Source of the DNA: Phyllobates terribilis
Taxonomy: Eukaryota
NCBI RefSeq assembly: GCF_046119375.1
Contig: NW_027362764.1
Location: forward strand, 189,038,001 to 189,102,000
DNA length: 64,000 nucleotides
Direction: 5' to 3'
Positions within the stretch are counted from its first letter, which is position 1; each line of letters opens with the position of its first letter. A model generated the notes under the pieces. The model made no database searches. It saw only the letters and a list, made by a program, of their open reading frames with translations, and was not told the DNA's origin. Shown one piece after another: positions 6,991 through 54,372 of the stretch. Both the position numbers and the translations under genes were made by a program.

Positions 6991-9611
6991 CCTCCTTATT
7001 TTAGTCAACTTTTGCTTTTCAATGCATAGGCGAACACTATGGGAGACCCACTCCCCAATAATGGGCAGAAGGTTTTTAGTACGCTGTAATCCACGTCTGT
7101 TTCAAGGGGCATTGCAGTTCCTCATAATTTTTGGAAAGCCTTCAATTCACTGCTTAGGCCAACAGTGTTAAGGTTTAGTTAAGGCCCTCTGACCTCCATG
7201 TCACTTCCAAGGGGCATTGGAGTGCCTCAAAATTTTTGGTAGGCATTGCACTCACCTATAAGTGTGTAGCCGAACCGCTCCTTTTGGTACAGAAACATAT
7301 CCTACAAGACATGTGTGGTTGACTGGCCTGATATTGATGTGAATGGTCCCTGTTCCTCCTGCTCTTTCTCCTTTGCCACCACCTCATCCATCATTCATCA
7401 CCTGAAGCTTTGTTTTAACGGGAGTCATAGAACTGGGATAATAGCAGGAAAACATCCAGCAATCCTTGGAGGAGGTAAGATATGCGCCAAAACGCTGACC
7501 ACCTCAGGCCTAGCCGCTACTACATACATGCGCTTGCATTCCAAGGAACAGAAAGCTAAGGAGATGGATGGCCTCATGATCATGAATAATTTACTCGTTG
7601 TGTAGGAGGCCGACCACTGCTGTTGTCTACCTTCTGAACTTTGTGATGAAGCATGAGTGACCCAGGACCCGCAATCCTAGTGTTCAACTGTGTCCCGGCT
7701 TCCACAATATTAACCCAGTGTGAAGGCGTCAGTGAGATGGACTATCCGTGGCCACATTCACTTGTCCAGGTGTTTGTGGTTAGACTGTCCTTCCCACTAA
7801 ATGCACTTGGGAGGCCCAATTTCAAGTGCAAGCAAGCAGTATGGTATTGCAGCCTGGGGGTGGGTGGGTAGCAGGCTGCATACTTGCGCTTGCATTGCAA
7901 GGAATGGGGGAGGTACAATTGAACACTGCCCTGGGACAAGGACTTGAACGGGGATAGTTGCAAATGTGCAACGACAGGTGCAGGGGAGGCATCTTCGCAT
8001 GTGCCATGAACAGGGGGTTGGCATGCACACACTACAGCGGAATAGGCTGTCCTTCCCATTAAATGCACTGGGGAGGGCACAAGTAATGTTTTCGTATGCG
8101 CGCTTGTGTATAAGGCGCACCGGGACAAATAGGGGCGGCTGGGGACAGAGTATGGACACCCGGCTGCCCCCTGGCGGCTGGAGACCGAGTGTGGACACCT
8201 GGCCGCTGGGCAGCTGGGACTGAGTATGGATACCAGGCCACCGACGCAGCCATGACATGGTGGCCGGCGTCTGCCTCCACAAGCCTAAAAGGCTTCATTT
8301 CAAGTGCAAGCAAGCTAGCAGTATGGTATTGCAGCCTGGGGGTGGGTGGGTGGCAGGCTGCACACTTACGCTTGCATTTCAAGAAAACAAAGCAGATGCT
8401 AACTTCTATCACCATCATGCTCCTCACCTTGGCACTCTCAACTCCCCTGATGGAGAATCCAGGGCCCACCGGAGGAGTCTGGTTGTCTGGTGGGCTCATC
8501 CAATGCTGCCCTGAAGCAGGCCAGGCTAAGAAAAGTGTGGGGAAGGTTCTCGGGACAAATAGTGGCGGTTTGGGACTGAGTATGGAGACCTTGCCACTGA
8601 CGCAGCCATGAGGTAGTAGCCAGCTTTTGTCTCCTCCAAACTAAAAGGCCCCATTTCAAGTGCAAGCTAGCAGTATAGTATTGCAGCCTGCGGGTGGGTG
8701 GGTGGTTGCCTGCATATTTGCGCTTGCATTGCAACGAATGGGGGAGGTACAATTGAACACTGCCCTGGGACAAGGACTTGCACAGGGATAGTTGCAAGTC
8801 TGCATCTTCTGATGTGGCAAGGATCACTTCTTATGGGCACACTATTAGGCAGTGACCTGGGTGTCAGAGATGCTTCCAGGGGTCTTCCCCGTGCTGTTCC
8901 CAAGTCTTTTCAGCACTGTATGCATGTGTCACACAGCACATGACCAGATAAGGTTGTAAAATGACATTTCCTGGTGAATGCATTTGTCACGGTTGAAAGC
9001 AATACAAAAGTGCAAAAACGCATAAAAAATGCTACTTGTGAACATAGCCCAAGGTGTGGAGGAGTATTTTTGTTTTTGGTTATTTATTTTACCTTATACA
9101 CAAGTCTTTACCCTGGAAAGGATGTTCCTTAACATATTTCACAGGAAAACAGTTTGTTTAGTTTTTGAACGTTTTATTGTGAGTCCGTAAAAGTGGCTTA
9201 ATACCTCTGACCACGTTATTGACAGCAGTGACCTGGGGGTCAGAAATGCTTCCTGGGGCGATCCCCATGCTGCCCCCATGTCATTTGAGCACTGTCACTA
9301 TCGTTTTGGGCACTTTTTAGGCTTTCTACAGACTGCCGGGGGTGCCGCCGCAAAAATGCTCGGGTCTGCCATAGACTAACATTGGGCTCGTTGCTCGGGT
9401 CGAGCACCCGAGTATCACGGTGAGCTCGGCCCGAGCTTCGAGCACCCGAGCATTTTAGTGCTCGCTCAACATTACTAATAGACCAAAATCAAGGGCTCTC
9501 CCATGAATCAAGAAAACCAATAGTTATATAGGAACATATAGCCAGAAATTCCTTAAAAAAAGATTTATTCTTTATTGCAGAAATATAAGAAAGAATTTTA
9601 ATACATTCATA

Positions 9612-9970
9612 TTGCATATATTAAATTGCATGTTAAATTTCCTAGAGGAGCATTGCACGGCGAATAAGCCTCCTTACATTGGCATGCCAGAGCCGGTGTG
9701 TCACTCTTCACAAGGAGAAACGTTATCCCTTAGACCTCAGTCCAAAGCCTCTCACCCAGCCAAATCAGTTCTCATACTTTGCACTGATGAGGGGACATAC
9801 CCCGAAACAATGTGTCTGCATATTGAGATTCTGATTTGGCTGTTATCCTAAGTCATATTGCAAGATTTATTAAAGGGTCGATAGTGAATTGTAGGATTGC
9901 TGCTTCCAACAGGTGGCGCTATAGAGTTTAAGTCCTCTTCCTGTCTGAAGAGGCAATTTGCATATTAAAT
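9612..9970 (+). mobile_element. Retrozyme-like non-autonomous retroelement monomer (~350 bp) with a hammerhead ribozyme
   Basis: Homologous by eye (roughly 80%) to the 330-bp tandem unit at 39483-40188 on the opposite strand. Central hammerhead sits within a long self-complementary stem. Confidence 0.8.
9780..9820 (+). ncRNA. Type I hammerhead ribozyme, intact core
   Basis: Stem I TGCA (9780-83)/TGCA (9817-20); CTGATGA 9784-90; stem II GGGG-acata-CCCC; GAAA 9804-07; stem III ACA-atg-TGT; GUC cleavage triplet 9814-16. Confidence 0.9.
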
Positions 9971-10020
9971 AATTTTAAGGAATTTCTGGCTATATGCTGC
10001 AATATAATTATAGGTTTTCT

Positions 10021-24619: not shown

Positions 24620-25132
24620 TAGTGTTGAGCCACCCCCGTAGTGTTCGAGTTCGGTTCGGTTCGTCGAACACCCGTGTGTTCACCGAACTGTTCGTCGAAC
24701 TGTTCGTCGAACACCTTCGAACACCGTTAAAACCAATGGCAGGCAAACAAAAACACATAGAAACACATAGAAAACACCTTCAAAGGTGTCCAAAAGCTGA
24801 CAAACTGCTCAGAAGACACAACTAACACATGGAAAAGTGACAAGTACATATAGTCATGCGAAAAGAAAAGAGGTGGAGGAGTAAAAGGAGGGGGAGACAC
24901 AGATATAGGCATGTCATGCCCTTCTAAAATCCAAAAAGTGAGAAGCCGACACTTTCAGTCCGCTCCTGCCCGTGCCACCTCCGTGTCGCCGGGTTTGTGC
25001 CAGAGCCGCGGTGAACCCTGACGGCCAGCCCCCCTCTCCCAATACTGGTGCCTGTCCGCTGGTGGGTCGAGCGAGCCCCCCTGTGGTGGAGGCAGCTCTA
25101 AGCTTTTTAATTTAAATTGTCTCTCTAATTTG

Positions 25133-25390
25133 AATAAATACACTTTAAATCCATTTACAAGGATCTATTGGAGGGCAAGTCTCATGCCAGCAGCCGCGTA
25201 ATTCCAGCTCCAGTAGCGTCCACTAAAGCTGCTGCAGTTAAAAAGCTTTTATAAGGATCGAGCTCGGCTGTCCACCGCAAGGCATCCTACTGCCAGTCCC
25301 AGCCCCTATGCCTTGGGGTGCCTCCTGATGCTCTTCACTGAGTATCCCGTGGTCCCGAAGCATTTCCTTTGAAAAAATTAAGTGTCCAAA
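25133..25390 (+). pseudogene. Degenerate internal fragment of 18S rRNA carried inside hAT-B
   Basis: cactttaaatcc...attggagggcaagtct..tgccagcagccgcg-taattccagctcca..agcgt...taaag.tgctgcagttaaaaagct...gatgctctt.actgagt.tccc...cccgaagc.ttt.ctttgaaaaaatt matches the conserved 18S helix-18/V4 region. Confidence 0.9.
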
Positions 25391-25502: not shown

Positions 25503-27320
25503 TACTCTCGTTGGATGCTGAGAAAGCATTCCATAGAGTCTCCTGGCACGCCATATATGATTCTCTTAAAAAGCTTGGGGTAGGGGTCTAGGGGACCCTT
25601 TTATAGCCAAAATCACGGCCCTGTATCGCAATACGTCACCTAGGCTGAAGATAAATGGAACTGTAGCACCCTGAGGGCTTGGTTGCTACAGAGGTATTGC
25701 ACCTCACCCAGAGGTGTGATATCTCACTCTCAGGTAAGGATGTAGTGTGGATCAGGACCCGACACCTGCATGCATTACACCACATTGCCGTGGGGCAGGG
25801 CGACCAATATGCCCCTGAGATGGCCACGACAGTCCCTGTCCCTGGCTGGAGTGGGGGGAGGGAACACTGAGGAAGGGGAACCCTGTAGTGCAGGAGCAGG
25901 GAGGAAGCAGTTCCTGGGTGCATTGAGAAGGGAGTATAAAAGGTGGGCACCATCTTAGTTCAGTGCAGAGAAGTCTGAGCAGAAGTGGCAGGGAGCAGGG
26001 GCTCTGCATGAGCTCTGCTCCGGAGGCGGGCCTAGTAACAGAGGCCCAGGCCTGGAAGAGGGAGAAGGAAGGAAGAGGAGCGGAGAAGGCTCCAGGAACG
26101 AGGAACGAAGGGATCTCAGGGGTGCGGACGGGCGAGTCGCCACCGCACGCCCGAATCCACCTGCGTGGAGGGGTCAGGCCAAAGGGGGAGACCGGTCCCC
26201 GAAACTAGTGGAGGCAGGAAACGACCCTCAGCTAGAAACAGGAGGCTGTGACATTTTATGTGGCGCAGCCCCTCGCTACACCCGCTAGGAAGGCACCACA
26301 TAGGGTCAGGGAAACTGGCGCCAAGTTTACCAAGAGGAGGCCCGAGGCAGCCGGACAGAAGGGTTGGTAAGAAAGGCCAGACAAAGGACACACAAAGGGG
26401 GTCCTGTGAAGCACTCCAAAGTTATCTGGGAGTTGTCTGAGCCCCTCACCTGGTGAGCACAGTACGACGTGGGCAGCCGTTACCTGCAGACGTGGTCTGG
26501 ATAATAAGAACTGTGAGTAAAGGCCCTGGACTGCATCACTGACTCCGTGTCATTACTGCTGCTGCCCTGCACCATCACCCCCATCCTCCGCATACACTGC
26601 CCTGAGGCTATACTCCTCCCGTGGGGAGTTATGCTACGCTCTGCTGCACACACAACACCAGCCTCAGCGGTCTGCCCTGGAGCGGCGGTTCACTCTGACC
26701 GCAATCCACGGGTGGCGTAGTCGGACATTTAAACATCAAAACCACATAAATAGTTCCGCCACTGGTTTGACCGCCCTGAGCCACGGAACCGGGTTGCCGC
26801 CACGGAGACTACAACCACCAGCATCCACCAAAAAGGGTCCGGCTCCGGGTGTCCCAAGGCCCAGGGGGCGCGTCAGAACATTTTCATCACCTTTCACAAT
26901 CACCAATGGGACAAGGCAGGGATGTTCTCTGTCCCCTCTCTTATACATCCTAGTGACGGAGCACCTGCTCTCATCAATTCGCCATAACCCCAATATTAGG
27001 TGGATTGAGGTGGGAGGCACCGAGTACAAGTGCTCTCTATTTGCTGATGATGTCCTAGTATATATCACTCAATCACATATATCCATCCATGCTGTTATGG
27101 CTGAAATAGATCACTTTGTTACATGGTCAAATTTTAAAATCAATGCAGCGAAGTCTGAGGCCCTCGATGTCTCCCTCCCCAAATCCATATAGGATTCCAT
27201 CCAGTCCAACTTTCCCTTTGCCTGGCCCTCACAGGGTATCAAATACTTAGGAATTCCTATTCATAGAGACCTCTCCCATCTATGTTATCTTAATTTTGGG
27301 CCCTTTATTGAACAACTCCA
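25503..27320 (+). mobile_element. Internal L1-clade reverse transcriptase fragment (~600 bp), split by a solo LTR
   Basis: LSLDAEKAF, LKINGT|FSSPFTITNGTRQGCSLSPLLY, FADDVLVY and FKINAAKSE motifs. No 3' UTR or poly(A). Confidence 0.88.
25662..26875 (+). mobile_element. Solo LTR (1214 bp), gypsy-type family
   Basis: TGTAGCACCC...GGGGGCGCGTCA ends; 4-bp TSD GAAC at 25658-61 and 26876-79; TATA box gtataaaagg. Confidence 0.93.
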
Positions 27321-27324
27321 TACA

Positions 27325-28885
27325 GACCACGGTTGGCAAGTTAGAACTGTAAGATTCACTACGTGAACCACTGGTGTTTTGTGGAAAAGCACATGTACAC
27401 TGTGTTCCAAATTATTATGCAAAAAGTGTTATGGAGTGATAAGGGAAGAATTTGTTTGTTTGTCAGTTAAACTCATTGATGGTGATGTGTGTCAGGGCTC
27501 TTTATATCACTGTAAGCAATTGCAGACACCTGTGCTAATTAGTTTGGCAGGTGTGTCCAATGAAAGGCAAGACTACTTAAGAAGGCTGTCTCACATTATT
27601 AAGCAGCCTACATTTTCTGCCAAAATGGGAAAGAAAAAGGATGTGTCGGCTGCTGAGAAGCAACAAATTGTGGAGTGTTTAGGTCAAGGCATGACTGCAA
27701 TCAACATTGTGCGATGATCAGGATGAAGTGTCTTGGCAATCAAGAAGTATGTAGCTGATTCACAGTACACACGTGTGCGTGCTGATAAGGGCAAATTGAG
27801 GACTCTTTCCTACAGGCAATTACGTCAGGTTGAAAGAGCAGCGGCAAAAAAGCCTTGTCATAGCAGCAGACAAGTTTTTGAAGCTGCTTGTGCCTCCAAC
27901 GCCCCCCGAACAACAAGATGCAGGGTCCTTCAGAGGTTTGCAGCTGTGCATACGCCATCCTGTCGACCTCCTCTATCCACTTCACACAAGCAGAAACGGC
28001 TCCAGTGGGCCAAACATTACATGAAGACTGATTTCAAAACTGTTTTGTTCACGGATGAGTGCCGTGCAGCGCTCGATGGTCCAGATGGATGGAGTGGAGG
28101 ATGGCTGGTTGATGGACACCCCACGCAAACACGGCTACAGCGCCAACAAGGAGGAGGTGGAGTAATGTTTTGGGCTGGAATCATGGGGAGAGAGATTGTC
28201 GGCCCCTTTAGGATCCCTGAAGGCGCTAAAGATGAACTCCATAATGTATGTGGATTTTCTCAAACAGCACTTCCTGCCATGGTTCAAGAAGAAGAACCGT
28301 GTATTTCACAGCAAGATCATTTTTCTGCATGATAATGCACCATCTCATGCTGCACATAAAACATCTGCATCTCTGGCTGATATGGGCATAAAAGGGGACA
28401 AACTTATGGTGTGACCCCCATGCTCCCCTGACCTCTACCCCATTCAGAACCTTTGGAGCATCATTAAAAGGAGTGTCTATGATGGCGGGAGGCAGTTCAC
28501 ATCTAAGCAACAGCTCTGGGAGGGTATTCTGTCCTCATGCAAAACAATTGAAGCAGAAACCATCCAAAACCTGACAAATTCAATGGACGAGAGAGTTCAG
28601 AAGCTCCTTTCGAACAAGGGGTCCTATGTGAAAATGTAACATCACCTAGAATAAAGTTTTGAGTTGAAAACTGTTTGATTTCAGTTTCTAACAACCTGCT
28701 AATGCTTATAATTTCAAAAATGACCATTTTTTTGGTCTTTATTAAAATGAAAAGGTTGATCGAAAAGTTTGGGGGATCTAAGAGTGTGGCAACCCAGTAG
28801 TCATGATTACTTCGAATTCTGACAATATGAGGGTCATGCTGCAGGTAGTGCAACAAGAAGGCACTTATGTGTCTTGGGCATCTCG
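27325..28885 (-). other. Diverged second fragment of hAT-B-type transposase sequence, interrupted by the TRT element
   Basis: 27325-27397 resembles 29660-29730; ~28760-28885 resembles ~29815-29935. Confidence 0.8.
27398..28760 (+). mobile_element. Tc1-superfamily DD37E (TRT-type) element, right end deleted; transposase pseudogene 27625-28639
   Basis: TA then CACTGTGTTCCAAATTATTATGCA left TIR. MGKKKD..., TDECRAALDGPDGW, and HDNAPSH...(37 aa)...Q where E is expected. Frameshifts and a stop. Confidence 0.85.
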
Positions 28886-29207
28886 GAGCCCCAAAATTAT
28901 TTTCCGGGCTAGATGCAGCTAAAAATTATTATTAATTTTAAATCTGGTGAAGCTTTAGTATAGATGGCCTAATAGGATCAGTGCTGCACACTGCTACAAA
29001 GCCCAAATTATTTTCCAGTCAAGATACAGATAAACATGATTAGTAATTTTAAATCTGGTGGAGCTTATTATAGATGGCCTAATAGAATCAGTGCTGCACA
29101 CTGCTACAAAGACCAAATTATTTTCCAGCCAAGATACAGATAAACATGATTAGTAATTTGAAAGCTTAAAACGGTTGGTAGGGTGATTTTAACCAATCAT
29201 CAAGCTT

Positions 29208-32200
29208 TTACTCTCCCCAGGATGACACAGGGGTAGAAAAGTCGTTTCGGATCCATGATTTGTTCATCTTTATGAACGTGAGTCTGTCTACATTATCAGT
29301 GGAGAGCCGCGTGCGCTTATCTGTCAGCACACCACCAGCAGCGCTGAACACACGTTCAGACAGAACGCTGGCTGCGGGGCATGACAAGATCTCCAAGGCG
29401 TAAGTGGCTAGCTCCGGCCATTTATCCAGATTGGAAGCCCAAAAAGAGCAAGGGTCCAGTGACACAGTCATGGCTTCAATGTTTACTTGGAGATACTCCT
29501 GTACCATCGTCTCTAGGCGTTGACTATGTGTCAGACTTCTTGTCTCCTGTGGCCTTGCAAAGGATGGGCTAAAAAAGTGGTGAAATGATTCCGCAAAATT
29601 GATGTTACCAGCAGATACTGTGGTTCTGTTACGGTTTGAGTGCTGAACACTTGACGGTCCCACGGTTGGCAAGTTGGAACTGTGAGATTCACTACGTGCA
29701 CCACTGGTATTTTGTGGAAAAGCACATGTAAGATTCTGCAACAGTCTCTGCTGATACTCCTGCATGCGTGCATCCCTTTCTATGGCAGGAATAATTTCTG
29801 CAAATTTACTTTTGTACCGGGGATCTAACAGTGTGGCAACCCAGTAGTCAGGATTATTTCTAATTCTCACAATTCGAGGGTCATGTTGCAGGTAGTGCAG
29901 CAAGAAGGCACTCATGTGTGTTGCGCATCCAGGAGCACCAAGTCCCTGTTGTGTTGGTGGCGAGGTAACAATCATGCTTCCTTCCTCTGTCCTTTCCCCC
30001 CAACCTCGCACAACAGAAATGTGATCAAGGTCTCCCTCATCTGATGAGTCTTCCATCAGTTCGTCCTCCACTTCTTCCTGGGCTCCTGCACCTTCCTCAC
30101 TAGTTTGGCTGCTACCATGCGCCCTGGTAAAACCATCTCCCCCACCCTCACATGCCTGCCGCCTTGGTGCTGCCGACCGTCTGGACCTTGCAGATGTTAG
30201 CCCTTCTGCATACAACTCCTCCTCCTCTACTTCCTCCACCTCCTCTTGTGCCACCACCTGACTCCGAATTCTGTTTAACATGTGCTCCAGCATGTAAATC
30301 ACCGGAATATTCATGCTGATAATGGCATCGTCAGCACTAAACATCTTCGTCGCCATTTCAAAACTGTGCAGAAGGGTGCATAGGTCCCTGATCTGAGACC
30401 ACTCCTCCAGCGTGATTTGCCCCACCTCTGGATCTCGTTGGCCCAGGCTATACGTCAGAACGTATTGCACCAGGGCTTGTCGGTGCTGCCACAGTCGCTG
30501 CAACATGTGCAGAGTTGAATTCCACCGGGTAGGCACATCGCATTTTAGCCGGTGAAGTGGCAGGCCCAACGACTTCTGTAGAGATGTAAGTCGCTGAGCT
30601 GCGGGATGCGAACGGCGGAAGTGAGCACACAGCGACCGTGCCCTCTGCAGAAGGCCATCTAGTCTGGGATAGTGGGCTAAAAATTGCTGGACAACCAGGT
30701 TCAACACGTGAGCCATACACGGCACGTGCATTGTCTCGAAAATCCTCTGTGTCCACCAGGCGGAAAGGCAGCATTTCTGTAGCCAAGAGCTTGCAGATGG
30801 TGAAATTCAACCTCTTAGCTTTCTCATGGCTAGGAGGAAATGGTCTTTTACTTGTCCACATCTGAGGGACCGAGGGCTGGCTATTGTGCTTAGACGGGGT
30901 TGATAAGGGTGTCCCCGGCAAACTGCCGGTCTGTGAGGAAGATGCAGGCGGACATGTTAGGTTGCCTTGATCCAAAGGTGGTGCTATCGATGTCGGACAG
31001 CGCTCAACACCAGCTGGTGTTACCACCTCCAAAGAAAATGATGACCTGCCAAACACGCTGGCTGTTGCGGGTAAAGAGGTGGCAGGTCTGCGCCCCAAAA
31101 CAGGTGTGACTGCTGTCCCCCCAGTCACAGAGGATGAAGAGGCCGCGGATGCACAAGATATGGCAGACGGTGGTTGGCCCGGCCGGCTAGGCCGCATTGT
31201 AGCACACTGAGCTTCCCACTGCAACTTATGCTTCATGTCCATGTGCCGGTTCATGCATGAAGTACTCAAACTATGTATTTTTTGGCCTCTACTTAGCTTT
31301 TGCTGACAAATGTTACAGATAACACGAGTTGGGTCATCTTTATCGATCTGAAAAAATGCCCAGGCTATGCAAGGCTTAGCACCCATGCGACCTGAAGAGC
31401 CACCACGACTTGTGGTGAGAGGCAGAGTTGTGTTTGAGGATGCAGTTGTTGACGTGCTTCCAGTACTACGTCTCTGTCCAGGAAGGCGCAACCTGACCTC
31501 GTCGTCACTAGCATCTTCCTCCACCTCCTCTGCTGACCTCATCTCTTGGCTGACTGTGGGTTGACAGTAAGTGAGATCTCCAACCTCATCATCATCACCC
31601 TGTGCGTTATCACACCCGTCGTCCTCAGAGCCAACCTGTTCCTGCCCTGACAAAAAACTAAAGTTGTCACTCCAATCAGGTATTTGAGTCTTATCATCAT
31701 CTTCCTCATTGTCTCCACCAACAGGAGTTACAGTTTGGGAATGAGGGTCTACATTATGGTCAGAACCTTCTGCGTCTGGTCCTGGATCCGACTCATAAAG
31801 ATTCTGGGCATCAGTGCAGATCATTTCCTCGTCTGGATTCACAGAAGCGCTGGAGTCGACCTCTGATTCCCAGGCTATAGTATGAGTAAACAGCTCTGCA
31901 GACTCAACCATCTGTTCTACCTCATACTCAGACGGGCAGCTGGAGATTTGGGAGCTGTGAGGAAGCAAGTGCGATTGGGGTGACACCTTTGAGGACTGGA
32001 GTATTTGTGATGTTGAAGTTGATGTGGAGGAGAGCCCACTTAAAGGAGCACTTGATATCCGTTGAAGCACCTGCTGTTTTTGTGCCTCATCTGGAATTTG
32101 TAGCGATTGGCGTGGCCGTAAGAAAGGGATCTTATCACATTGTCCGCTAAAAGAAGTAGACATTTTAGTTTGGCTGGAAGATGGTCTTTCTTCTGCAGAT

Positions 32201-32301
32201 GTTACTGTTGCTTTAACACCTACCCCACGGACACAACCTTTTTTCCCCTTCCCAACACGCCTATTCCCCTTTCCACCAGCAGCAGGCCTTTTTCCACTCA
32301 T
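29208..32301 (-). pseudogene. hAT-B transposase with an internal deletion removing the first two catalytic Asp motifs
   Basis: ATG at 32301; BED finger ICNICQQKLSRG...MNRHMDMKH. Sequence jumps from LVDTEDFRD directly to HVPCMAHVLNL (frame change ~30735). C-terminal half is open to the hATC domain (CPAASVLSERVFSAAGG). Confidence 0.92.
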
Positions 32302-32379
32302 TTTGGTGGTTAACTAATTAACAACTCTGGAGTTGTTTGCACAAAAAAACAATGGATGGTAACCGAGCAGAGCTGAGTG

Positions 32380-34430
32380 GCCAAACTGTGGTATTAGGCC
32401 AAAACTATTGGCTGGGTTAGATGCAGAAAAAAATTATATTCAAATTGCAACCTGATGGAGGTCAGTATAGATGGACTAATAGAGAAAGTCCCACACACTG
32501 CTAGAAGGCCAAATATTTTTTCAGAGCTAGATGCAGATAAAAATTATTTTTAATTTGCAACCTGATGGAGGTCAGTATAGATGGACTAATAGAGAATGTC
32601 CCACACACTGCTAGAAGGCCAAATATTTTTTCAGAGCTAGATGCAGATAAAAATTATTTTTAATTTGCAACCTGATGGAGGTCAGTATAGATGGACTAAT
32701 AGAGAAAGTCCCACACACTGCTAGAAGGCCAAATATTTTTTCAGAGGTAGATGCAGAAAAAAATATATTCAGTTTGCAACCTGATGGAGGTCTGTATAGA
32801 TGGATTAATAGAACAAGTCCCACACACAGCTAGAAGCCCAATATTTTTTCAGAGCTAGATGCAGAAAAAAATATATTCAGTTTGCAACCTGATGGAGGTC
32901 AGTATAGATGGACTAATACAACAAGTCCCACACACAGCTAGAAGCCCAATATTTTTTCAGAGGTAGATGCAGAAAAAAATATATTCAGTTTGCAACCTGA
33001 TGGAGGTCTGTATAGATGGATTAATAGAACAAGTCCCACACACAGCTAGAAGCCCAATATTTTTTCAGAGGTAGATGCAGAAAAAAATATATTCAGTTTG
33101 CAACCTGATGGAGGTCAGTATAGATGGACTGATACAACAAGTCCCACACACAGCTAGAAGCCCAATATTTTTTCAGAGGTAGATGCAGAAAAAAATATAT
33201 TCAGTTTGCAACCTGATGGAGGTCTGTATAGATGGACTAATACAACAAGTCCCACACACAGCTAGAAGCCCAATATTTTTTCAGAGGTAGATGCAGAAAA
33301 AAATATATTCAGTTTGCAACCTGATGGAGGTCAGTATAGATGGACTAATACAACAAGTCCCACACACAGCTAGAAGCCCAATATTTTTTCAGAGGTAGAT
33401 GCAGAAAAAAATATATTCAGTTTGCAACCTGATGGAGGTCTGTATAGATGGATTAATAGAACAAGTCCCACACACAGCTAGAAGCCCAATATTTTTTCAG
33501 AGGTAGATGCAGAAAAAAATATATTCAGTTTGCAACCTGATGGAGGTCTGTATAGATGGATTAATAGAACAAGTCCCACACACAGCTAGAAGCCCAATAT
33601 TTTTTCAGAGGTAGATGCAGAAAAAAATATATTCAGTTTGCAACCTGATGGAGGTCAGTATAGATGGACTAATACAACAAGTCCCACACACAGCTAGAAG
33701 CCCAATATTTTTCAGAGGTAGATGCAGAAAAAAATATATTCAGTTTGCAACCTGATGGAGGTCTGTATAGATGGATTAATAGAACAAGTCCCACACACAG
33801 CTAGAAGCCCAATATTTTTTCAGAGGTAGATGCAGAAAAAAAATATTCAGTTTGCAACCTGATGGAGGTCAGTATAGATGGACTAATACAACAAGTCCCA
33901 CACACAGCTAGAAGCCCAATATTTTTTCAGAGGCAGATGCAGAAAAAAATATATTCAGTTTGCAACCTGATGGAGGTCTGTATAGATGGACTAATACAAC
34001 AAGTCCCACACACAGCTAGAAGCCCAATATTTTTTCAGAGGTAGATGCAGAAAAAAATATATTCAGTTTGCAACCTGATGGAGGTCAGTATAGATGGACT
34101 AATAAAACAAGTCCCACACACAGCTAGAAGCCCAATATTTTTTCAGAGGTAGATGCAGAAAAAAATATATTCAGTTTGCAACCTGATGGAGGTCTGTATA
34201 GATGGATTAATAGAACAAGTCCCACACACAGCTAGAAGCCCAATATTTTTTCAGAGGTAGATGAAGAAAAAAATATATGCAGTTTGCAACCTGATGGAGG
34301 TCAGTATAGATGGACTAATACAACAAGTCCCACACACAGCTAGAAGCCCAATATTTTTTCAGAGCTAGATGTAGAAAAAAATTATATTCAATTTGCAACC
34401 TGATGGAGGTCAGTATAGATGGACTAATAG
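32380..34430. repeat. 108-bp satellite, ~19 copies, upstream of the hAT-B transposase
   Basis: Period of 108 measured at 32881/32989. Diverged units also at ~25445-25500 and ~28890-29160. Confidence 0.93.
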
Positions 34431-35349
34431 AATGATGCTATGCCCAAAAGATTTTACTTCACTAGGTGCAGTAAAAAAATTGGTATTCTATACACAGGTG
34501 GTATATCTTGCAACACAGATAGGCTACTCCACTGACTAACACACTCTGCAATAGGCCAAAAAGGATTAGCTTTGCTAGATTCAGCCAAATGCTGTGAAAA
34601 AAACTTGCACAGCACTGGCACAGACCTGCCTGGCAAAAACTGATAGGAACTGATGTAACTTAGTCCTGAAAAGGACTCCAATTACAATTAGTCTTTACTC
34701 CCACAATCTATCTATTTAAGAGCACAGACCTGCCTGATAAAAGTCGTAGGAAATGCTGTAACCTAGTCCTTAAAAGGACTGCAATCACAACTATTCCCTA
34801 CTCCCAAGCTATCTGTAGATTTGTGCGAAAATTGGCTTGAAATTAACAAGGTATAGCGCACACAGCAACAGCGGTGCCGTCTAACACGCAGCTGCAGCAG
34901 TGAGAAAATGGTGGCGACGGGGAAAATGGCTTGGTCTTATAGGGCAAGGACATGTGACATACACTGCCAATGACACATGCCCTTGCTTGTGTGAAAAAAA
35001 GCACTTCGCTCCGTGTGTGCGCTGCTGATAGGCTGACAGATTGCACCTCCCCACTGTAAATGCGGGAAAGAGAAAAAAAAAATGGAGATCTTCATTGTTC
35101 CTGCAGAGATCCATCCCCTGCCCCTCCCCCCACCCCGCTGTACACTCAAACTGCGTATTAACATTAATTTTCATCATTACTGAGAAAAAATCCAGTTATG
35201 ATTTTGGTGCACGAACAGTTATCGAACATAACCTCGAACAGCCGAATTTTTCTCAAATTGTTCGTGTTCGCCGAACGGCTCGAACACCGCCCAAAACAGC
35301 TCGAATTTGAGATTGGCGAACAGTTCGAGTAGAACAACGCTCATCTCTA

Positions 35350-37644
35350 GTCATTGCCACTCACCATCTTGGTGGACTCCTCAAAGTTTGTCAGGATGGT
35401 ACATATGTCAGACATCCAGGTCCACTCCTGAGGTCTTATGTGTGAAGTCTGACCTGAATATCGACGGCCTTGTTGCAGCTGGTACTCCACAACTGCTCTC
35501 TTCTGCTCACAATTCCTTTGCAACATGTGGAGGGTAGAATTCCAACATGTGGGGACATCACACTCCAGTCGGTGTGCCGGAAGCTGCAAACGCTGCTGCA
35601 ACACAGCAAGGGCGGCGGAAGCTGTAGCCGACTTCCGAAAATGAGCTGACAGGCGGCGTACTTTGACGAGCAGATCTGGCAACTCGGGGTACGATGTAAG
35701 AAACCACTGAACCACGAGGTTAAGCACATGAGCCAGGCATGGTACGTGTGTGATCTCGCCTCGCCTCAGAGCCGCCTCCAGGTTACGGCCATTGTCACAC
35801 ACGACCATGTCTGGATGTAGGTTCAGCGGTCTCAGTCACAGATCTGCCTGCTCTTTCACAGCTGTCCACAACTCACAAGCAGTGTGAGGTTTATCACCTA
35901 AGCTTATGAGTTTCAGCACAGCCTGTTGCCGCTTGGCTGAGGCAGTACTGCAGTGCTTCCAGCTTGTAACTGATGTGGTGATATCTGAGAAGGAGGCTGA
36001 ACATGAGGAGGAGGAGGATGATGCGCAGGAGTTGTACACTGTGGGGGCAACTCTGACTGACATAGGGCCCGCAATCCTCGGTGTGGGGAGGATGTGTTCC
36101 ATCCCAAGGTCCGACTGGGTCCCGGCTTCCACTATGTTTACCCAGTGTGCCGCCAGGGAGATGTACCGTCCCTGGCCACAAGCACTTGCCCACGTGTCCG
36201 TTGTCAGGTGGACTCTCCCAGTAACTGCGTTGTTGAGGGCACGGCACATATTTTGGGACACGTGCTTGTGTAGTGCGGAGATGGTACACCGGGCAAAATA
36301 GTGTCGGCTGGGGACCGAGTACCGAGGGACGGCCACCGCCATAAGGTTGCGGATGGATTCCGTCTCCACCAGCCTAAAAGGCAGCATTTCCAATGCAAGC
36401 AGTCCTGAAATGTGCGAATTTAGGACTGTGGCCTGTGGGGCGTTGGCTGCGAATTTGCGCTTTCGTTCAAAGGTCTGGGATATGGACAACTGAACGCTGC
36501 GGTGGGACGTGGACGTCGACGTTGATGCTGTTTCTTGAGAAACTGCCATAACAAGTGAAGACTGAGAGGAGGGGGCATCTTTGCATGCAGTATGGACAGG
36601 GGATTGCCTTGCAGGCACAACAGGGGGTTCTCTTACATGCACAACAGCGGAAGAAGCAGTGGTGACACCCCCTGACACTGGTCGTGGACCCTGGGGTTCG
36701 CCCCACAAAGTCGGGTGCTTTGCTGACATGTGCCTGATCATGCTGGTGGTGGTCAGGCTGGTAGTTTTGTCACCCCTCCTGATGCTGGCCTGGCTGGTGG
36801 TACAAATGGCCTTTTTGGGGTTATCAGCAGAGTCTTTCAAAAAATTCCAGACTCTGGAAGACCTACCGGTTGTACTGGCAACGTCCCTCGTATTGGTGTT
36901 ACGGGGAACAGTTGGCCGCCTTCTGTCTGCGGCCACCATACTGCTTCTTCCTGCCTGTTGGGGAACTCTGCCTCCCTCCCCCTGTGTGCTGCTGGACTTG
37001 CTCTGCGTGTCCTCCTGCCACGTTGGGTCAGTTACTAGATTATCCACCACCTCCTCCTCTTCCACTTCCGCACCACGGTCCTCCTCCTCTCTTCGTGGCA
37101 ATTGTGTCTCGTCATCGTCCACCTCTTGTGACAAATTGCCAGCGTCGCTTTCCTGTGGCCGTGGCTGTTCAAATATTTGGCCATCGCTACATGGGATCTC
37201 CTCTTCCACCACTTCAAGTGGAGCAGGCGAGGGGCCCAAATATGGAAATGGACCAGTGAACAGCTCTTCAGAGTGTCCAACTGTGGGATCAGTTGCTGTC
37301 TGACGACACTCGGCATGGTGGGAGGAAGGAGAATCAGGATGAGGAGGAGTATGCGGTCGAAACTCACAGCTACTAACACTTGACCGTGTGGAAGACAGAC
37401 CGGAGGTGGTGGTGCCCAGGTGACTGGAAGTATTATCTGCTATCCAATTAATAACCTGTTCACACTGATCAGTTCGCAATAGTGGTGTTGTTGTGTGCTT
37501 CCCTAGTAATTCGGTCAAGAACTAGGAGCGAGAAGATGAGGCTGTTGGTTGTGGCACATTTTCACCTTGGCCACGGCTCCATCCTCTGCATGCACCATCA
37601 CCAGAACGTCCAGTTCCACGTCCCTTGCCACGCTCCTTGCCCAT
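35350..37644 (-). pseudogene. N-terminal and catalytic part of the hAT-A copy 2 transposase
   Basis: ATG at 37644; nonsense codons near 37523 and 35837; TTDTWAS, VCDNGRN, CLAHVLNL and DVPTCWNST motifs. Confidence 0.93.
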
Positions 37645-38385: not shown

Positions 38386-39621
38386 TTTTTGGGGGGGGGA
38401 ATACCAAAAGGTTAATAAAGCGGGTATTTGTACAGTCTGACTGAGGAAAAAAAAAGAGGATTTAGATGAAAAAAAAGGATTTTTCCTGGCCCCTGAGACC
38501 TGGGGCTAAGTCTAGCAATGTGAGAAGCAGTACACAGGACTGTAATGCAGTGTTTGTTGGTATAACCACTGCCTCTCCTATACAGCCTGCCTGCCTGATA
38601 TCTGGGATGCATATTAGTCCTGAGAAGGACTGTTTGTTTGATTTGGCAGGCTTTAGAGACCCTACACTACCTATTTCGCACTATATATCTCTCCCTAACT
38701 CAGCAGCACTGACCCTACACTGTCTAATCCCGGCGACTGTGTCCAAGATGGCGGCGCCCGGTTTTAAATACTCGAGGTGACACTGTGCGGCCAGGCAATC
38801 ACTGTAATGCCTACAACCAACATGACTGCGGCATTACAGTGACTGGCTGGCATTCCCTGCATGTTCATTGGCTCTGTAAAGAGCGCCAAACGTGCAGGGC
38901 GGAGACCCGAGCTCCTGCCCGAGTAACCCAGAAATACTCGGTGCTCGCCGAACATCCCGAGTAGTGAGATGCTCGGGCGAGTACCGAGCAGTGTCGAACA
39001 TGCTTGCTCAACACTAATTGCTATATCTGCAAATGTCCGATCTATCAAAATATTAAATTATTTAATTCAGAAATTCAATGCCATAAAGCAAAAAAAGAAA
39101 AATTGAAATACCAGAACTGCATTTTTTTTGCTTGCCACACCTCCCACAAAAATGAAATAAAAAAATTATAGGTACCACAAAATTATACCAATAAAAACAG
39201 ATGGATGCTGGGTGTGACACGGGGGGTAACCCCTCCCACAACCCAGCAGCCAGCGCGGGGACCCCAGCGCTGAGTCACGCCTCACTTGTCGTGACGTCAG
39301 CGCTGGGTCATGTGATGCCTGTGAGCGGCTAAGGATAGCGCCGCTCACAGGCAGAAACAGCAACGTAAGGTATTTGCAAAAATCCTTAGGGGCCCCGGGG
39401 GATAATATAAAGTACTGGACAACTTCTTTAAATATGACATACAAATCAGAGACAAAAAAAAAACGGTGTCAAAAACGCTATATGCAAATTGCCTCTTCAA
39501 AGAGGAAGATGATTAGAACTCTAGTGCCACTTATTGGAAGTAGCAATCCTAAAAAGTCAATATCGACCCTTTAACGAGCTTTGGCACATGACTTAGGATA
39601 AAAGCCAAACCAGAATCTCAA

Positions 39622-39666
39622 TTTGCAGATACTGCGTTCCGGGGTATTGCCCCTCATCAGTACAAA
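39622..39666 (-). ncRNA. Hammerhead ribozyme motif, degenerate core (GGAA for GAAA)
   Basis: Minus strand reads tttgta CTGATGA GGGG caata CCCC GGAA cgcagt ATC tgcaaa. Confidence 0.8.
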
Positions 39667-39951
39667 GTATGAGACCTGATTTGGCTAGGTGAGATGCTTA
39701 AGATTGGGATCTAAGGGGTAACGTTTCTCCTTGTGGAGAGTGACAAGCCATGCCTGGCATGTCAGAGTGAGGAGACTTATACGCCATGCATGCTCTTTTG
39801 GGCAATTAAATATACAAATTGCCCCATCAGAGAAGAAGAGGACTAGAACTCTAGTGCCACTTATTGGAAGTAGCAATCCTAAAAAGTCAATATCGACCCT
39901 TTAACGAGCTTTGGCACATGACTTAGGATAAAAGCCAAACCAGAATCTCAA

Positions 39952-39996
39952 TTTGCAGATACTGTGTTCCGGGGTATTGCCCCTCATCAGTACAAA
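39952..39996 (-). ncRNA. Hammerhead ribozyme motif, second tandem copy, same GGAA change
   Basis: Minus strand reads CTGATGA GGGG caata CCCC GGAA cacagt ATC tgcaaa. Confidence 0.8.
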
Positions 39997-40239
39997 GTAT
40001 GAGACCTGATTTGGCTAGGTGAGATGCTTAAGATTGGGATCTAAAGGGTAACGTTTCTCCTTGTGGAGAGTGACAAGCCATGCCTGGCATGTCAGAGTGA
40101 GGAGACTTATACGCTTTGCATGCTCTTTTGGGCAATTAAATATACAAATTGCCTCATCAGAGAGGAAGAGGACTAGAACTCTAGTGCCAAACGCTATAAA
40201 AACGTACTCAAGATGGGGTTCAGAGTGTACATTAATGAG

Positions 40240-40331
40240 AAAAAAATGAACTTTTTAGAATTTACCAAATGACTGCAATGAAACAAAGAGTGAACAATTT
40301 ATAGGGGTCTGAATACTTTCCATACCCACTG
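40240..40331. mobile_element. Tc1 terminal remnant
   Basis: ggggtctgaatactttccatacccactg|ta resembles a Tc1 TIR end. Confidence 0.5.
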
Positions 40332-41485
40332 TATATGCAAAATCTGTGCTATGTGAACCCAAGAATACAGCAGGGTAAGTAATTAGCAAAGCAATGCTGT
40401 AATAAATCTTAATACGCTGGCATTCGAAAATGTCCTTGTAGACCTAGCCTGTTAAGAAACATTGCGCAGCATCTTTTCCACTTTTGATAATAGGGAATAT
40501 ACTTCATTAACATAGTTTGGATATATGACGCGCTTCTGGAGCAGAAAATGTCTCCGTACAGCTACATTGTAGACATTACCAGTCTCTGTTTTCCGTGATT
40601 GCGCTGATGTACAGTAGGTAATATAATAGTTATCATAAGTAAGGGTCTTTTTAATCTGTCACAGTAAGGTTTAGGAATTCATTCTCAAAGCTGATCTAGC
40701 ATCTACTGTTACAGCAATCAGCGATATATTGCCACATGTGCCAATAGAGTTGGTTGTTTGAAGTCTATAGGGGAAAATGTGTGACATTCCTATTTGTCTA
40801 TAAAGATGGCCTTACAGCCAGACACTTTGGCATCTACCATTATTTTATGATGTATAGACTGGCAGAGACAGGTGGAATTATTTATTGATGCAAGTGCAAC
40901 ACATTCATGGGATTGTATAGTTTATATGTATGTCACAATAAAAAATAACAAAAATAGTATTGAAGCTTTAACCCCTTAACACCCACCAATACGCATTAAA
41001 ATGGCGATCGTTGTGGGGCCTTATTCCTGATTTTTAAAACAGTCAGGAATAAGTGAATAGCGCTTCACCGCGGGTGCAATTCCCGCATGTGACAGCTGTA
41101 CATGACTGTTAAGCAGACACAAATATTAAAAGCACCCACTGTGGTCAAAAGTTAGTTTCAGCAAAATAGTAGGTTAGTAGGTATAGCACTTAATTTTTAA
41201 TAAACTAATAAATAAAAGTATCCTAGTAAAATCATCATAACAAATCAAAACCACCAATTCAATAGTGCTACTTGTACTTATAAACAGCCGTAGAAATGTG
41301 AACACACAGTGCCGCGGAATAAAAAACTTGGAACAATCTCACCACTATGTCAGCAGAAAATCCTGAGTAGTTCCATAAATGAGATCCTCAGTTGTTAGGG
41401 AGATCATGTTTCCATGTTTCAATCCCTTATTTATGGGACTCCCCAATATTTACTCTGCACGCGTTTCATACAATCATACAATCAT

Positions 41486-53694: not shown

Positions 53695-54372
53695 CTGCTG
53701 GCATCTACTGTGCCATGATTTTGGGACCTTTTCCTATGCATTGGTGCAAACTACAGGATTCTACCTGAATTGAACCACCCGGTCCTTTTTTTTAAAGCAA
53801 TCTACTACCTATCTCAGATAAGTCCATTTTTCTCTTATAGTGCATATTACAGTGTTTATTTGCTTTTCTGAGATTATTGATCATTTCTCTGTTTATATCT
53901 CTTGATTGAGATTAAACTATATTTAGCACCTATCATATGATTATAGATATCTGGATGTGACCTGGGCAGTACCACTGCATAGGATAAAGAATTTTGCTAA
54001 ATAATTCTTAGTTAATGTATGTCTGGTGCAAGGGCCTAATAGGGCCATCAAGGGACAGCCGACGTGGAGCGGGGACACCAAACCGTCTTGCTAGGGTGAT
54101 AAACGTCCGCTGTCAGGTATGGTCCTAGTTTGTTTAGGGACATCTAGGGCCAGCCTGAATGACATTATCTCATCGTACCCTTGATCATTACCCTGTGTTG
54201 CACGGACATTTTTTGGTGTTGGTCCATTTTGTGACCAATTAGTCGGTCTTTTAAAATATCTATTAAAAGTTACATTTTATTCTGGGGTTTTTTTCTTTGT
54301 CTGTTTTTTTTTTTTTTTTTTTGAGCCATTGGATTTACCTGTACATTTACAGTATACACTATATACTATCTA

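What the first reader, a model, noticed from the sequence alone, without database searches (positions are those of the whole stretch)
39473..40198. 2.1-mer of the same retrozyme with a 10-bp TSD: footprint of reverse transcription of a circular or multimeric RNA
Seen: exact 330-bp period, ~46 bp of a third unit, and TSD AAACGCTATA on both sides. The ends fall away from the hammerhead cleavage site, i.e. the unit is circularly permuted. The two units differ at only a few positions and both carry GAAA>GGAA and GUC>AUC. Inference: a permuted, greater-than-unit insertion with a TSD is what target-primed rolling-circle RT on a circRNA would leave. The shared dead core means either the template was catalytically weak or the dimer arose by local duplication after insertion.
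Basis: partly seen in the sequence, partly recalled or inferred. Interest (0 to 1): 0.75.

Follow-up and report, generated by a model that had tools for sequence, protein, structure and literature searches.

The report
Decayed frog retrozyme insertion, later duplicated
This is a real but ordinary insertion of a known small hammerhead-ribozyme retroelement (a frog "retrozyme", like newt satellite 2); its two-unit form most likely arose by a later local duplication, not by rolling round an RNA circle twice.

Summary
There are 2.15 head-to-tail units of exactly 330 bp (39480-40189), flanked by a perfect 10-bp direct repeat, AAACGCTATA. A type I hammerhead lies on the minus strand. Both units carry GAAA>GGAA (A13G) and GUC>AUC, and the ends lie 148 nt from the cleavage site.

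The element is a known kind: an amphibian satellite-2-like non-LTR retrozyme. Contigs show it is very abundant in this frog and three relatives, and this scan has noted it many times on other DNA of this genome. More-than-unit cDNA copied from a circular RNA is already the published model.

- **Shared end.** The only other copy in the window (9636-9965, intact core, 12-bp TSD) ends at the same position. In ribozyme sense both end at ...GGCAAUUUGCAUAU, in a hairpin loop about 149 nt after the cleavage site. This argues against random permutation.
- **Clustered differences.** Unit differences cluster in the 50-nt terminal redundancy (5/50 against 6/330, p=0.008). The outer copy keeps family letters where the other two share derived ones. 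This rejects one circle copied 2.15 times. It fits a ~1.15-unit insertion followed by unequal exchange.
- **Possible subfamily.** The two core mutations are rare in relatives but held by about 7-10% of depth in this species, which hints at a ribozyme-impaired subfamily.

It is a new member of a known kind, of modest interest.

The parts
39473..39482 (.). Left copy of the target-site duplication AAACGCTATA. Its last three bases (ATA) also match the start of the element, giving microhomology.
39480..39529 (-). Segment 'a': the outer copy of the 50-nt terminal redundancy, which is the 3' end of the element in ribozyme sense. It holds an intact octamer, ATGCAAAT. It differs at 5/50 from 40140-40189 and at 7/50 from 39810-39859.
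39480..39809 (-). Unit 1 (330 bp).
39619..39690 (-). Hammerhead of unit 1 with extended helix I. The core carries A13G (GGAA) and G16.2A (AUC). The nominal cleavage site is between 39628 and 39627.
   Evidence: weak Rfam match
39800..39824 (-). Boundary hairpin GGGCAAUU-UGUAUAUUU-AAUUGCCC. The unit boundary, and hence the insertion's end position, lies in its loop.
39810..40139 (-). Unit 2 (330 bp). Outside its first 50 nt it differs from unit 1 at only 4 positions. It shares with unit 1 the letters at 39580/39910 and the two core mutations; at all of these most family depth reads another letter.
39949..40020 (-). Hammerhead of unit 2, with the same two core mutations.
40140..40189 (-). Segment a': a partial third unit (50 nt), which is the 5' end of the element in ribozyme sense. 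It differs at 2 positions from the start of unit 2.
40189..40198 (.). Right copy of the target-site duplication AAACGCTATA.
40199..40336 (.). Host sequence: the end of a very abundant repeat. Its terminus ...GGGGTCTGAATACTTTCCATACCCACTG|TA looks like a Tc1/mariner-type end; that naming is from my own knowledge and was not tested.
   Evidence: (depth and loose ends at 40333-40336)
9601..9967 (+). Comparison copy of the same family. It is one unit plus a tail of about 30 nt, with an intact hammerhead core (cleavage after 9816). It has the same ribozyme-sense 3' end (...GGCAATTTGCATATT) and is flanked by AAAGAATTTTAA / AAATAATTTTAA (11/12 identical) in the loop of an inverted-repeat host.

Best explanation
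A non-autonomous, non-coding hammerhead retroelement was inserted by target-primed reverse transcription into the end region of another repeat. It is a frog non-LTR retrozyme, the counterpart of newt and axolotl satellite 2. A staggered break produced the 10-bp duplication.

The RNA was of ribozyme (minus-strand) sense. DNA synthesis started at a preferred place, the loop of a small hairpin at the unit boundary, about 148 nt downstream of the hammerhead cleavage site. The ATA microhomology with the nicked target suggests how it was primed. Synthesis ran for a little more than one unit (about 1.15) on a template continuous across the cleavage site. That template was either a ligated circle or an uncleaved multimer; which one is not resolved.

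Later, unequal exchange or replication slippage between the two 50-nt terminal copies added one whole unit, giving 2.15. The exchange would have fallen within their longest identical block, 39514-39529. The core changes A13G and G16.2A were present before that duplication. They were probably already in the source RNA of a ribozyme-impaired subfamily, so this locus does not make a self-cleaving RNA.

Shown: the anatomy, the TSD, the mutated core, the shared end of two copies, and the uneven differences. Inferred: the priming strand, the two-step order, the template form, and the enzyme (most likely a Penelope-like element's reverse transcriptase and endonuclease).
For: The period, copy number and TSD come.

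Family letters are C at 39630/39960 and T at 39639/39969 in more than 90% of depth in four runs.

Both window copies have the same ribozyme-sense 3' end, 148-151 nt after the cleavage site. The chance of agreement within +/-3 nt under random permutation is about 7/330 = 0.02. Six contig pieces from three species stop at 39480-39485; four of them carry 35 to 529 further unlike letters on that side, one only 16, and one ends there (table 8).

The uneven differences are 7/34 against 4/296 between units 1 and 2 (p=1.7e-5), and 5/50 for a-a' against 6/330 for the later comparisons (p=0.008). Segment a has G and T at offsets 4 and 16, as does copy B, and family depth confirms the T at offset 16 (39826 and 40156 A>T in 98-99% of depth). 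The middle copy and a' share A and A at those sites.

T at 39580/39910 is shared by both units, while 96-99% of family depth has C.

From the literature: non-LTR retrozymes run from dimers to multimers and have TSDs larger than 4 bp (PMC7229834). Monomers are evenly dispersed while multimers are clustered in Xenopus, and retrozymes are related to PLE pseudo-LTRs (bioRxiv 10.64898/2026.07.22.740005). PLEs and their non-autonomous derivatives give 5'-truncated partial tandems and head-to-tail insertions (PMC8557442).
Against: - Only two copies could be read directly, and the contig pieces shown are a selected sample.
- The strongest loose end in all four runs is at about 39697-39710, not at the unit boundary, so the family has other frequent boundaries or sub-elements.
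- The a-a' divergence rests on 5 sites in 50.
- A perfect 10/10 TSD beside 10% a-a' divergence is only moderately likely (about 0.35).
- A multimeric template from a heterogeneous array, or a template switch after the first ~34 nt, could also give the pattern in one step.
- No orthologous or allelic empty or monomer site could be recovered.
- No RNA run holding the stretch was found.
- No Penelope-like gene was found among the ten window ORFs of 192 aa or more that were scanned, and similarity to a PLE end could not be tested.
Confidence: 0.5

Rival explanations
1. One-step insertion from a linear, uncleaved multimeric transcript of a ribozyme-impaired tandem array. This is a Penelope-type partial tandem: a 5'-truncated copy followed by two full units, with a fixed 3' end. 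It may include a template switch after the first ~34 nt.
For: - The letters of the two core mutations are kept by 9.7% and 7.2% of depth in organism A. In relatives the figures are 1.3-2.2% and 0.26-0.44%, and the background at a private site is about 0.6-1%. Impaired units are therefore multi-copy, and such RNA would stay multimeric.
- Multimeric RNAs are documented in amphibians, and their hammerheads cleave poorly as monomers (PMC7229834).
- Non-autonomous PLEs give multicopy head-to-tail insertions (PMC8557442).
- The shared end of the two copies fits a fixed 3' start.
Against: Units 1 and 2 are nearly identical outside the first 50 nt and share letters that are rare in the family (39580/39910). 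All the excess divergence sits exactly within the terminal redundancy. An array template does not predict that; a later duplication does.
Confidence: 0.27
2. One reading: target-primed rolling-circle reverse transcription went 2.15 times round one circular RNA, starting at a random point.
For: - The insertion is longer than a unit, is permuted relative to the cleavage site, and has a TSD.
- This is the published model for retrozymes (PMC7761336).
- circRNAs of such elements are abundant in axolotl (PMC7229834).
Against: - Three copies of one circle segment should be identical at insertion. Here the outer one keeps family letters at two sites where the other two share derived letters, and it differs about 5-fold more than the rest.
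- A circle needs self-cleavage, but both laps carry A13G and G16.2A, so the template itself was impaired.
- The start point coincides with that of the second copy.
Confidence: 0.1
3. A DNA-level event with no reverse transcription. A fragment of satellite or extrachromosomal circular DNA was captured at a staggered break, or the flanking repeat is a chance match.
For: Satellite-like arrays of this family exist, and multimers are clustered in Xenopus (bioRxiv 10.64898/2026.07.22.740005). The element has no poly(A) tail.
Against: - The 10/10 repeat abuts both ends exactly and is the only such run at that offset in the window.
- A second copy has its own 12-bp duplication and the same end.
- Other notes of this scan list further TSD-flanked copies (unverified).
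- Random DNA fragments would not share an end.
Confidence: 0.05

Closest known systems
Metazoan non-LTR retrozymes (Cervera & de la Pena 2020, PMC7229834; axolotl Rtz_331/353) and newt/salamander satellite 2 (Epstein & Gall 1987, as cited there)
   Same: - A ~330-bp non-coding unit in head-to-tail copies, with GC 43%.
- One type I hammerhead per unit, with a 2-bp helix III and a long helix I.
- A TSD longer than 4 bp, and no LTR, PBS or PPT.
- Very high copy number in an amphibian.
   Different: - The host is a frog rather than a salamander.
- This copy's core carries A13G and G16.2A.
- Sequence homology to the salamander units was not tested here.
- Expression as circRNA was not tested.
- The published description states that no conserved motif points to the mobilising element. 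Here two copies share a defined end in a hairpin loop.
Penelope-like elements and their non-autonomous derivatives (Craig et al. 2021, PMC8557442; Li, Clavereau & Pollet 2026, bioRxiv 10.64898/2026.07.22.740005)
   Same: - A partial tandem: a 5'-truncated copy ahead of full copies.
- A shared 3' end with a variable 5' end.
- No poly(A).
- A short extra tail on copy B (about 30 nt).
- A hammerhead in the repeated part.
- Proposed dependence on the PLE RT/GIY-YIG endonuclease.
   Different: - The element has no ORF.
- No PLE domain was found among the ten window ORFs scanned.
- Similarity of its end to a PLE pseudo-LTR could not be tested.
- The hammerhead is the fuller amphibian form, not the minimal PLE variant.
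Plant LTR retrozymes (Cervera et al. 2016, PMC4918200)
   Same: Non-autonomous retroelements whose hammerheads yield circular RNA, which is thought to template cDNA of more than unit length.
   Different: The plant elements have type III hammerheads in ~350-bp LTRs, a PBS and PPT, 4-bp TSDs and Ty3-gypsy dependence. None of these is present here.
SINE-type target-primed reverse transcription
   Same: A small non-coding RNA is copied at a nicked target. It leaves a TSD of 10-12 bp, microhomology at the start, and a variable 5' end.
   Different: This element has no A-rich or LINE-derived tail at this end, has tandem organisation, and carries a ribozyme.

Membership tests
Hammerhead ribozyme, type I | Conserved core CUGANGA ... 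GAAA ... UH, with all invariant bases present | tested here: not met
   Both units read CUGAUGA ... GGAA ... AUC. A13 is G, and position 16.2 is A opposite C15.2. Copy B at 9760-9870 has the full core, CUGAUGA ... GAAA ... GUC.
Hammerhead ribozyme, type I | Three helices round the core, with helix I open and helices II and III closed by loops | tested here: met
   Helix II is GGGG/CCCC with a 5-nt loop. Helix III is at most 2 bp with a 5-nt loop. Helix I is UUUGUA/UGCAAA and is extended to about 25 bp in the MFE fold.
Hammerhead ribozyme, type I | Reaches the Rfam gathering score for a hammerhead family | tested here: not met
   The only match is Hammerhead_3 at 14.9 bits against a cut-off of 48.5, E=7.5. 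The intact copy B gives no hammerhead match either. The models evidently do not fit this short-helix-III form.
Hammerhead ribozyme, type I | Self-cleavage | not testable with these tools
   This needs in vitro transcription of monomer and dimer constructs.
Non-LTR retrozyme (metazoan) | Short tandem units of 150-450 bp, from dimers to multimers, each with a type I hammerhead | tested here: met
   The unit is 330 bp with 2.15 copies and a hammerhead motif in each full unit. The motif is mutated.
Non-LTR retrozyme (metazoan) | Non-coding, low GC (below 45-50%), with no LTR, PBS or PPT | tested here: met
   GC is 43.1%, and the longest stop-free stretch is 71 aa. The only terminal repeats are the unit repeats themselves. 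No specific search for PBS or PPT motifs was run.
Non-LTR retrozyme (metazoan) | Target-site duplication larger than 4 bp when present | tested here: met
   The TSD is 10 bp here and 12 bp (11/12 identical) for copy B.
Non-LTR retrozyme (metazoan) | Expressed as linear and circular unit-length RNA | tested here: inconclusive
   No listed run holding the stretch is on record as RNA, and all runs are kept as contigs. This locus is unlikely to self-cleave.
Penelope-like non-autonomous element | Common 3' end with variable 5' truncation or partial tandem | tested here: inconclusive
   Two of two window copies share the end, and six contig pieces stop there. Another strong boundary near 39697-39710 exists in the family.
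Penelope-like non-autonomous element | Sequence similarity of its end to the pseudo-LTR or 3' end of an autonomous PLE of the same genome | not testable with these tools
   None of the ten scanned window ORFs of 192 aa or more has a PLE domain. No genome or repeat library is available.
Amphibian satellite 2 | Sequence homology to the newt/salamander 330-bp unit | not tested
   No reference sequence was available through the tools. The resemblance rests on size, ribozyme form and the octamer motif.

The most novel reading that the evidence does not exclude
Frog retrozyme cDNA synthesis starts at a defined site, the loop of the boundary hairpin that holds the octamer, about 149 nt downstream of the ribozyme cut. 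It usually runs just over one lap. A subfamily with a crippled ribozyme core has nevertheless amplified in this species. Together these would give the first cis-acting start signal for non-LTR retrozyme mobilisation. They would also show that self-cleavage in cis is dispensable for transposition.
Probability: 0.25. Interest if true: 0.55.

Novelty: new member of a known kind. Interest (0 to 1): 0.3.

Why it matters
The mobilisation of animal retrozymes is still a model without direct evidence. The reviews state that no conserved motif points to the enzyme or the start site (PMC7761336). The 2026 preprint linking retrozymes to Penelope-like elements says the mechanism remains to be characterised.

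A clean TSD-flanked copy such as this one shows what information single loci hold: which strand was copied, where copying began, how far it went, and what happened afterwards. Here that information argues that multi-unit copies can be secondary, and that ends are not random.

If a genome-wide census confirms this, it would turn the rolling-circle idea into a testable, site-specific priming model. By itself the locus is an ordinary, decayed repeat copy with no likely function.

Tried and rejected
1. **Rfam.** At gathering thresholds nothing was found in the region. At E up to 10 there was only a sub-threshold Hammerhead_3 match, plus a whalefall-1 match on the opposite strand (24 bits against a cut-off of 37). 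Copy B lacks that match, so I treat it as chance.

2. **Terminus opposite the ribozyme nick.** The terminus is 92% complementary to the cleavage-site region (I7). This suggested that the DNA end lies opposite the ribozyme nick in a rod. The circular MFE fold instead pairs the cleavage-site strand in a long helix I and puts the terminus in its own hairpin loop, so I dropped the idea.

3. **Paralogous empty site.** Neither flank has another copy in the window. One organism-A contig joins 39427 to 40232, but with only 21 nt on the shorter side and unknown letters between. That is too weak to use.

4. **Orthologous or allelic site.** No contig bridges the insertion. The relatives' contigs match only 40490-40800, at about 90% identity.

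5. **More copies from public collections.** A metagenome scan with the hammerhead core found 4 contigs that share only the 25-nt core. The other collections hold no frog DNA.

6. **Partner element.** Pfam scans of ten window ORFs of 192 aa or more found only Tc1-type and hAT transposase domains and no Penelope-like RT or GIY-YIG domain.

7. **Mate of the host repeat's end.** A search for the Tc1-like end found none within 3 mismatches.

Full report
**1. What is there**

Tandem Repeats Finder reports one array at 39480-40189 with period 330, 2.2 copies, 96% matches and no indels. Unit 1 (39480-39809) and unit 2 (39810-40139) differ at 11 positions, and a 50-nt third piece follows at 40140-40189.

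The decamer AAACGCTATA stands at 39473-39482 and again at 40189-40198, directly against both ends of the array. At offset 716 it is the only run of ten or more matches in the 64-kb window. Ten-out-of-ten matches occur at 1.5e-4 of positions at random offsets, so the flanking repeat is not chance. Three of its bases on the left (ATA) and one on the right (A) could equally be element sequence. The duplication is therefore 6-10 bp with microhomology at the junctions.

**2. The ribozyme**

The hammerhead is on the minus strand. In each unit the sequence parses as CUGAUGA, GGGG-CAAUA-CCCC (helix II), GGAA, C, a 5-nt loop, A, UC. The nominal cleavage site is after 39628 in unit 1 and after 39958 in unit 2. 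Helix I (UUUGUA/UGCAAA) extends to about 25 bp in the circular minimum-free-energy fold.

Compared with the canonical core, A13 is G, and position 16.2 is A opposite C15.2 in a helix III of only two pairs. The other copy of the family in the window (9636-9965, opposite orientation, 80% identical) reads GAAA and GUC. In contigs of four sequencing runs, more than 90% of the depth has C at 39630/39960 and T at 39639/39969, which are the canonical letters.

From established mutational work on the hammerhead core (my own knowledge: Ruffner, Stormo and Uhlenbeck 1990), an A13 change is severely disabling. AUC as such can be cleaved, but here it also breaks one of the two helix III pairs.

Rfam does not recognise this form. 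The best hammerhead match is 14.9 bits against a cut-off of 48.5, and even the intact copy gives none.

**3. What family it belongs to**

The element has these properties:
- a 330-bp non-coding unit with GC 43%;
- one type I hammerhead per unit, with a very short helix III;
- head-to-tail copies, and a TSD longer than 4 bp.

These are the properties of the non-LTR retrozymes of animals, first seen as newt satellite 2 and described for axolotl with 330- and 350-bp units (PMC7229834).

Earlier notes of this scan say the genome is a frog and record the same 330-332-bp element many times on other pieces, including other TSD-flanked copies (unverified notes). Laying contigs of another individual of the species and of three related organisms put 26,800-37,297 contigs on the stretch. 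Depth jumps sharply at the left junction, so the family is very abundant and shared among relatives.

The host sequence on the right (40199-40336) is the end of an even more abundant repeat. Its terminus looks Tc1-like (the naming is my inference).

**4. Is the permutation random?**

In ribozyme sense the insertion ends with ...GGCAAUUUGCAUAU at 39480, 148 nt after the cleavage site. The second copy ends with ...GGCAAUUUGCAUAUU, 149-151 nt after its cleavage site. It is followed by its own duplication, AAAGAATTTTAA / AAATAATTTTAA, in the loop of an inverted-repeat host.

Under random permutation, two ends would agree within 3 nt with probability about 0.02. The other end differs: 2.15 units here, against one unit plus a tail of about 30 nt there. 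Six contig pieces from three species also stop at 39480-39485. Four of them carry 35 to 529 further unlike letters on that side, one only 16, and one ends there (table 8).

In the fold, the unit boundary lies in the loop of an 8-bp hairpin, GGGCAAUU/AAUUGCCC, which also carries the octamer ATGCAAAT.

A fixed 3' end, a variable 5' end and a 5'-truncated copy ahead of full copies form the layout described for Penelope-like elements and their non-autonomous derivatives (PMC8557442). A 2026 preprint argues that animal retrozymes derive from such elements (10.64898/2026.07.22.740005).

The support is limited to two readable copies. The strongest loose end in all four runs lies near 39697-39710, followed by heterogeneous letters that are A-rich in ribozyme sense. 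The family therefore has other boundaries or sub-elements that I could not resolve.

**5. One step or two?**

If one circle had been copied 2.15 times, the three copies of its first 50 nt would have been identical at insertion and would have diverged like the rest. They did not.
- Seven of the eleven unit 1/unit 2 differences fall in the first 34 nt (7/34 against 4/296, p=1.7e-5).
- The outer copy a (39480-39529) differs from the far copy a' (40140-40189) at 5/50. All comparisons that a later duplication would reset differ at 6/330 (p=0.008).
- At offsets 4 and 16, a has G and T, as in copy B. Family depth confirms the T at offset 16 (39826 and 40156 A>T in 98-99% of depth). The middle copy and a' share A and A at those sites.
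- At offsets 20, 30 and 33, a alone is derived.

This is the pattern expected if about 1.15 units (a-body-a') were inserted, a and a' then diverged, and an unequal exchange between a' and a added one unit. The middle copy is a'-like at all five sites. That places the exchange in the last 16 nt, the longest identical block.

Both units also share T at 39580/39910, where 96-99% of family depth has C. That fits a recent common origin of the two units.

A heterogeneous multimeric template, or a template switch after about 34 nt, could produce the pattern in one step. I cannot exclude either. Neither predicts that the divergent zone should coincide with the terminal redundancy.

**6. The dead core**

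The reference letters at the two mutated core positions are kept by 9.7% and 7.2% of depth in the other individual of the species. In the three relatives the figures are only 1.3-2.2% and 0.26-0.44%. The residual at a site private to this locus (40156) is 0.6-1.0% in all four runs.

Contig depth is a poor count, and linkage of the two changes is not shown. Still, this hints that impaired units are a multi-copy, species-specific subfamily. If so, the source RNA was already impaired. That favours an uncleaved multimer over a ribozyme-made circle as template, and suggests that self-cleavage in cis is not needed for spread.

**7. What could not be done**

- No contig bridges the insertion, and the relatives' contigs match only 40490-40800 at about 90% identity. 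The decisive orthologous-site test is therefore open.
- No RNA run holding the stretch was found.
- Neither flank recurs in the window.
- A metagenome scan with the ribozyme core returned only unrelated hammerheads.
- No Penelope-like ORF is among the ten window ORFs that were scanned.

**8. Verdict**

This is a genuine, well-delimited, decayed copy of a known retroelement class. For this locus its specific form, random start and 2.15 laps, is not supported.

The useful residue is a testable refinement: site-preferred priming in the boundary hairpin, about one lap of synthesis, secondary duplication, and possibly a ribozyme-impaired subfamily.

Noticed in passing
window 39723-39774 and 40053-40104 (+ strand): There is a sub-threshold Rfam match to the whalefall-1 RNA motif (24.1 bits, cut-off 37, E 1e-3 for the 1.1-kb search). 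It lies on the strand opposite to the hammerhead and includes the motif's single-stranded UCAG-GUGAGGA block. The older copy at 9636-9965 lacks it, so it is probably chance.
   Followed up: partly
window ~39697-39710 (and the equivalent position in unit 2): In all four runs the best-supported loose end is 'before 39710' (173-245 contigs). About 13 nt of family sequence (CTTTKRACTGAGG) are preceded by heterogeneous letters that are A-rich in ribozyme sense. This suggests a frequent second boundary, or a tailed derivative of the retrozyme that ends just upstream of the hammerhead.
   Followed up: no
window 39629-39710: Contigs of all four runs skip 75-80 nt here. In one organism-C contig the gap holds 33 other letters that lack the CUGAUGA box. 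This may be a shorter, ribozyme-less variant of the family.
   Followed up: no
window 9517-10014: The intact-core retrozyme monomer sits between inverted arms that share a 21-nt exact core, catatagccagaaattcctta. With the 11/12 duplication TTAAAATT(A/C)TTT, this reads as an insertion into the loop of a hairpin (MITE-like) element. About 30 nt of stuttered ATGCAA-type tail lie at its ribozyme-sense 5' end.
   Followed up: partly
window 40199-40336: This is the end of an extremely abundant repeat, with contig depth above that of the retrozyme. It has a Tc1/mariner-like terminus ...CCCACTG followed by TA. No mate terminus lies within 3 mismatches in the window.
   Followed up: partly
window 35836-37518 (- strand): A 560-aa ORF lies 2 kb from the finding and has no Pfam match at E<=1e-3. 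It was not examined further.
   Followed up: no
window 54358-55567: A long, near-perfect inverted repeat is flanked by the direct repeat ACTATATACTATCTA. I saw no obvious hammerhead core when reading it. It is a different family from the retrozyme.
   Followed up: no
window 25100-25219 (+ strand): A fragment matching eukaryotic SSU rRNA (61 bits) lies in non-ribosomal surroundings. Another note of this scan lists it as captured inside a hAT-like element.
   Followed up: no
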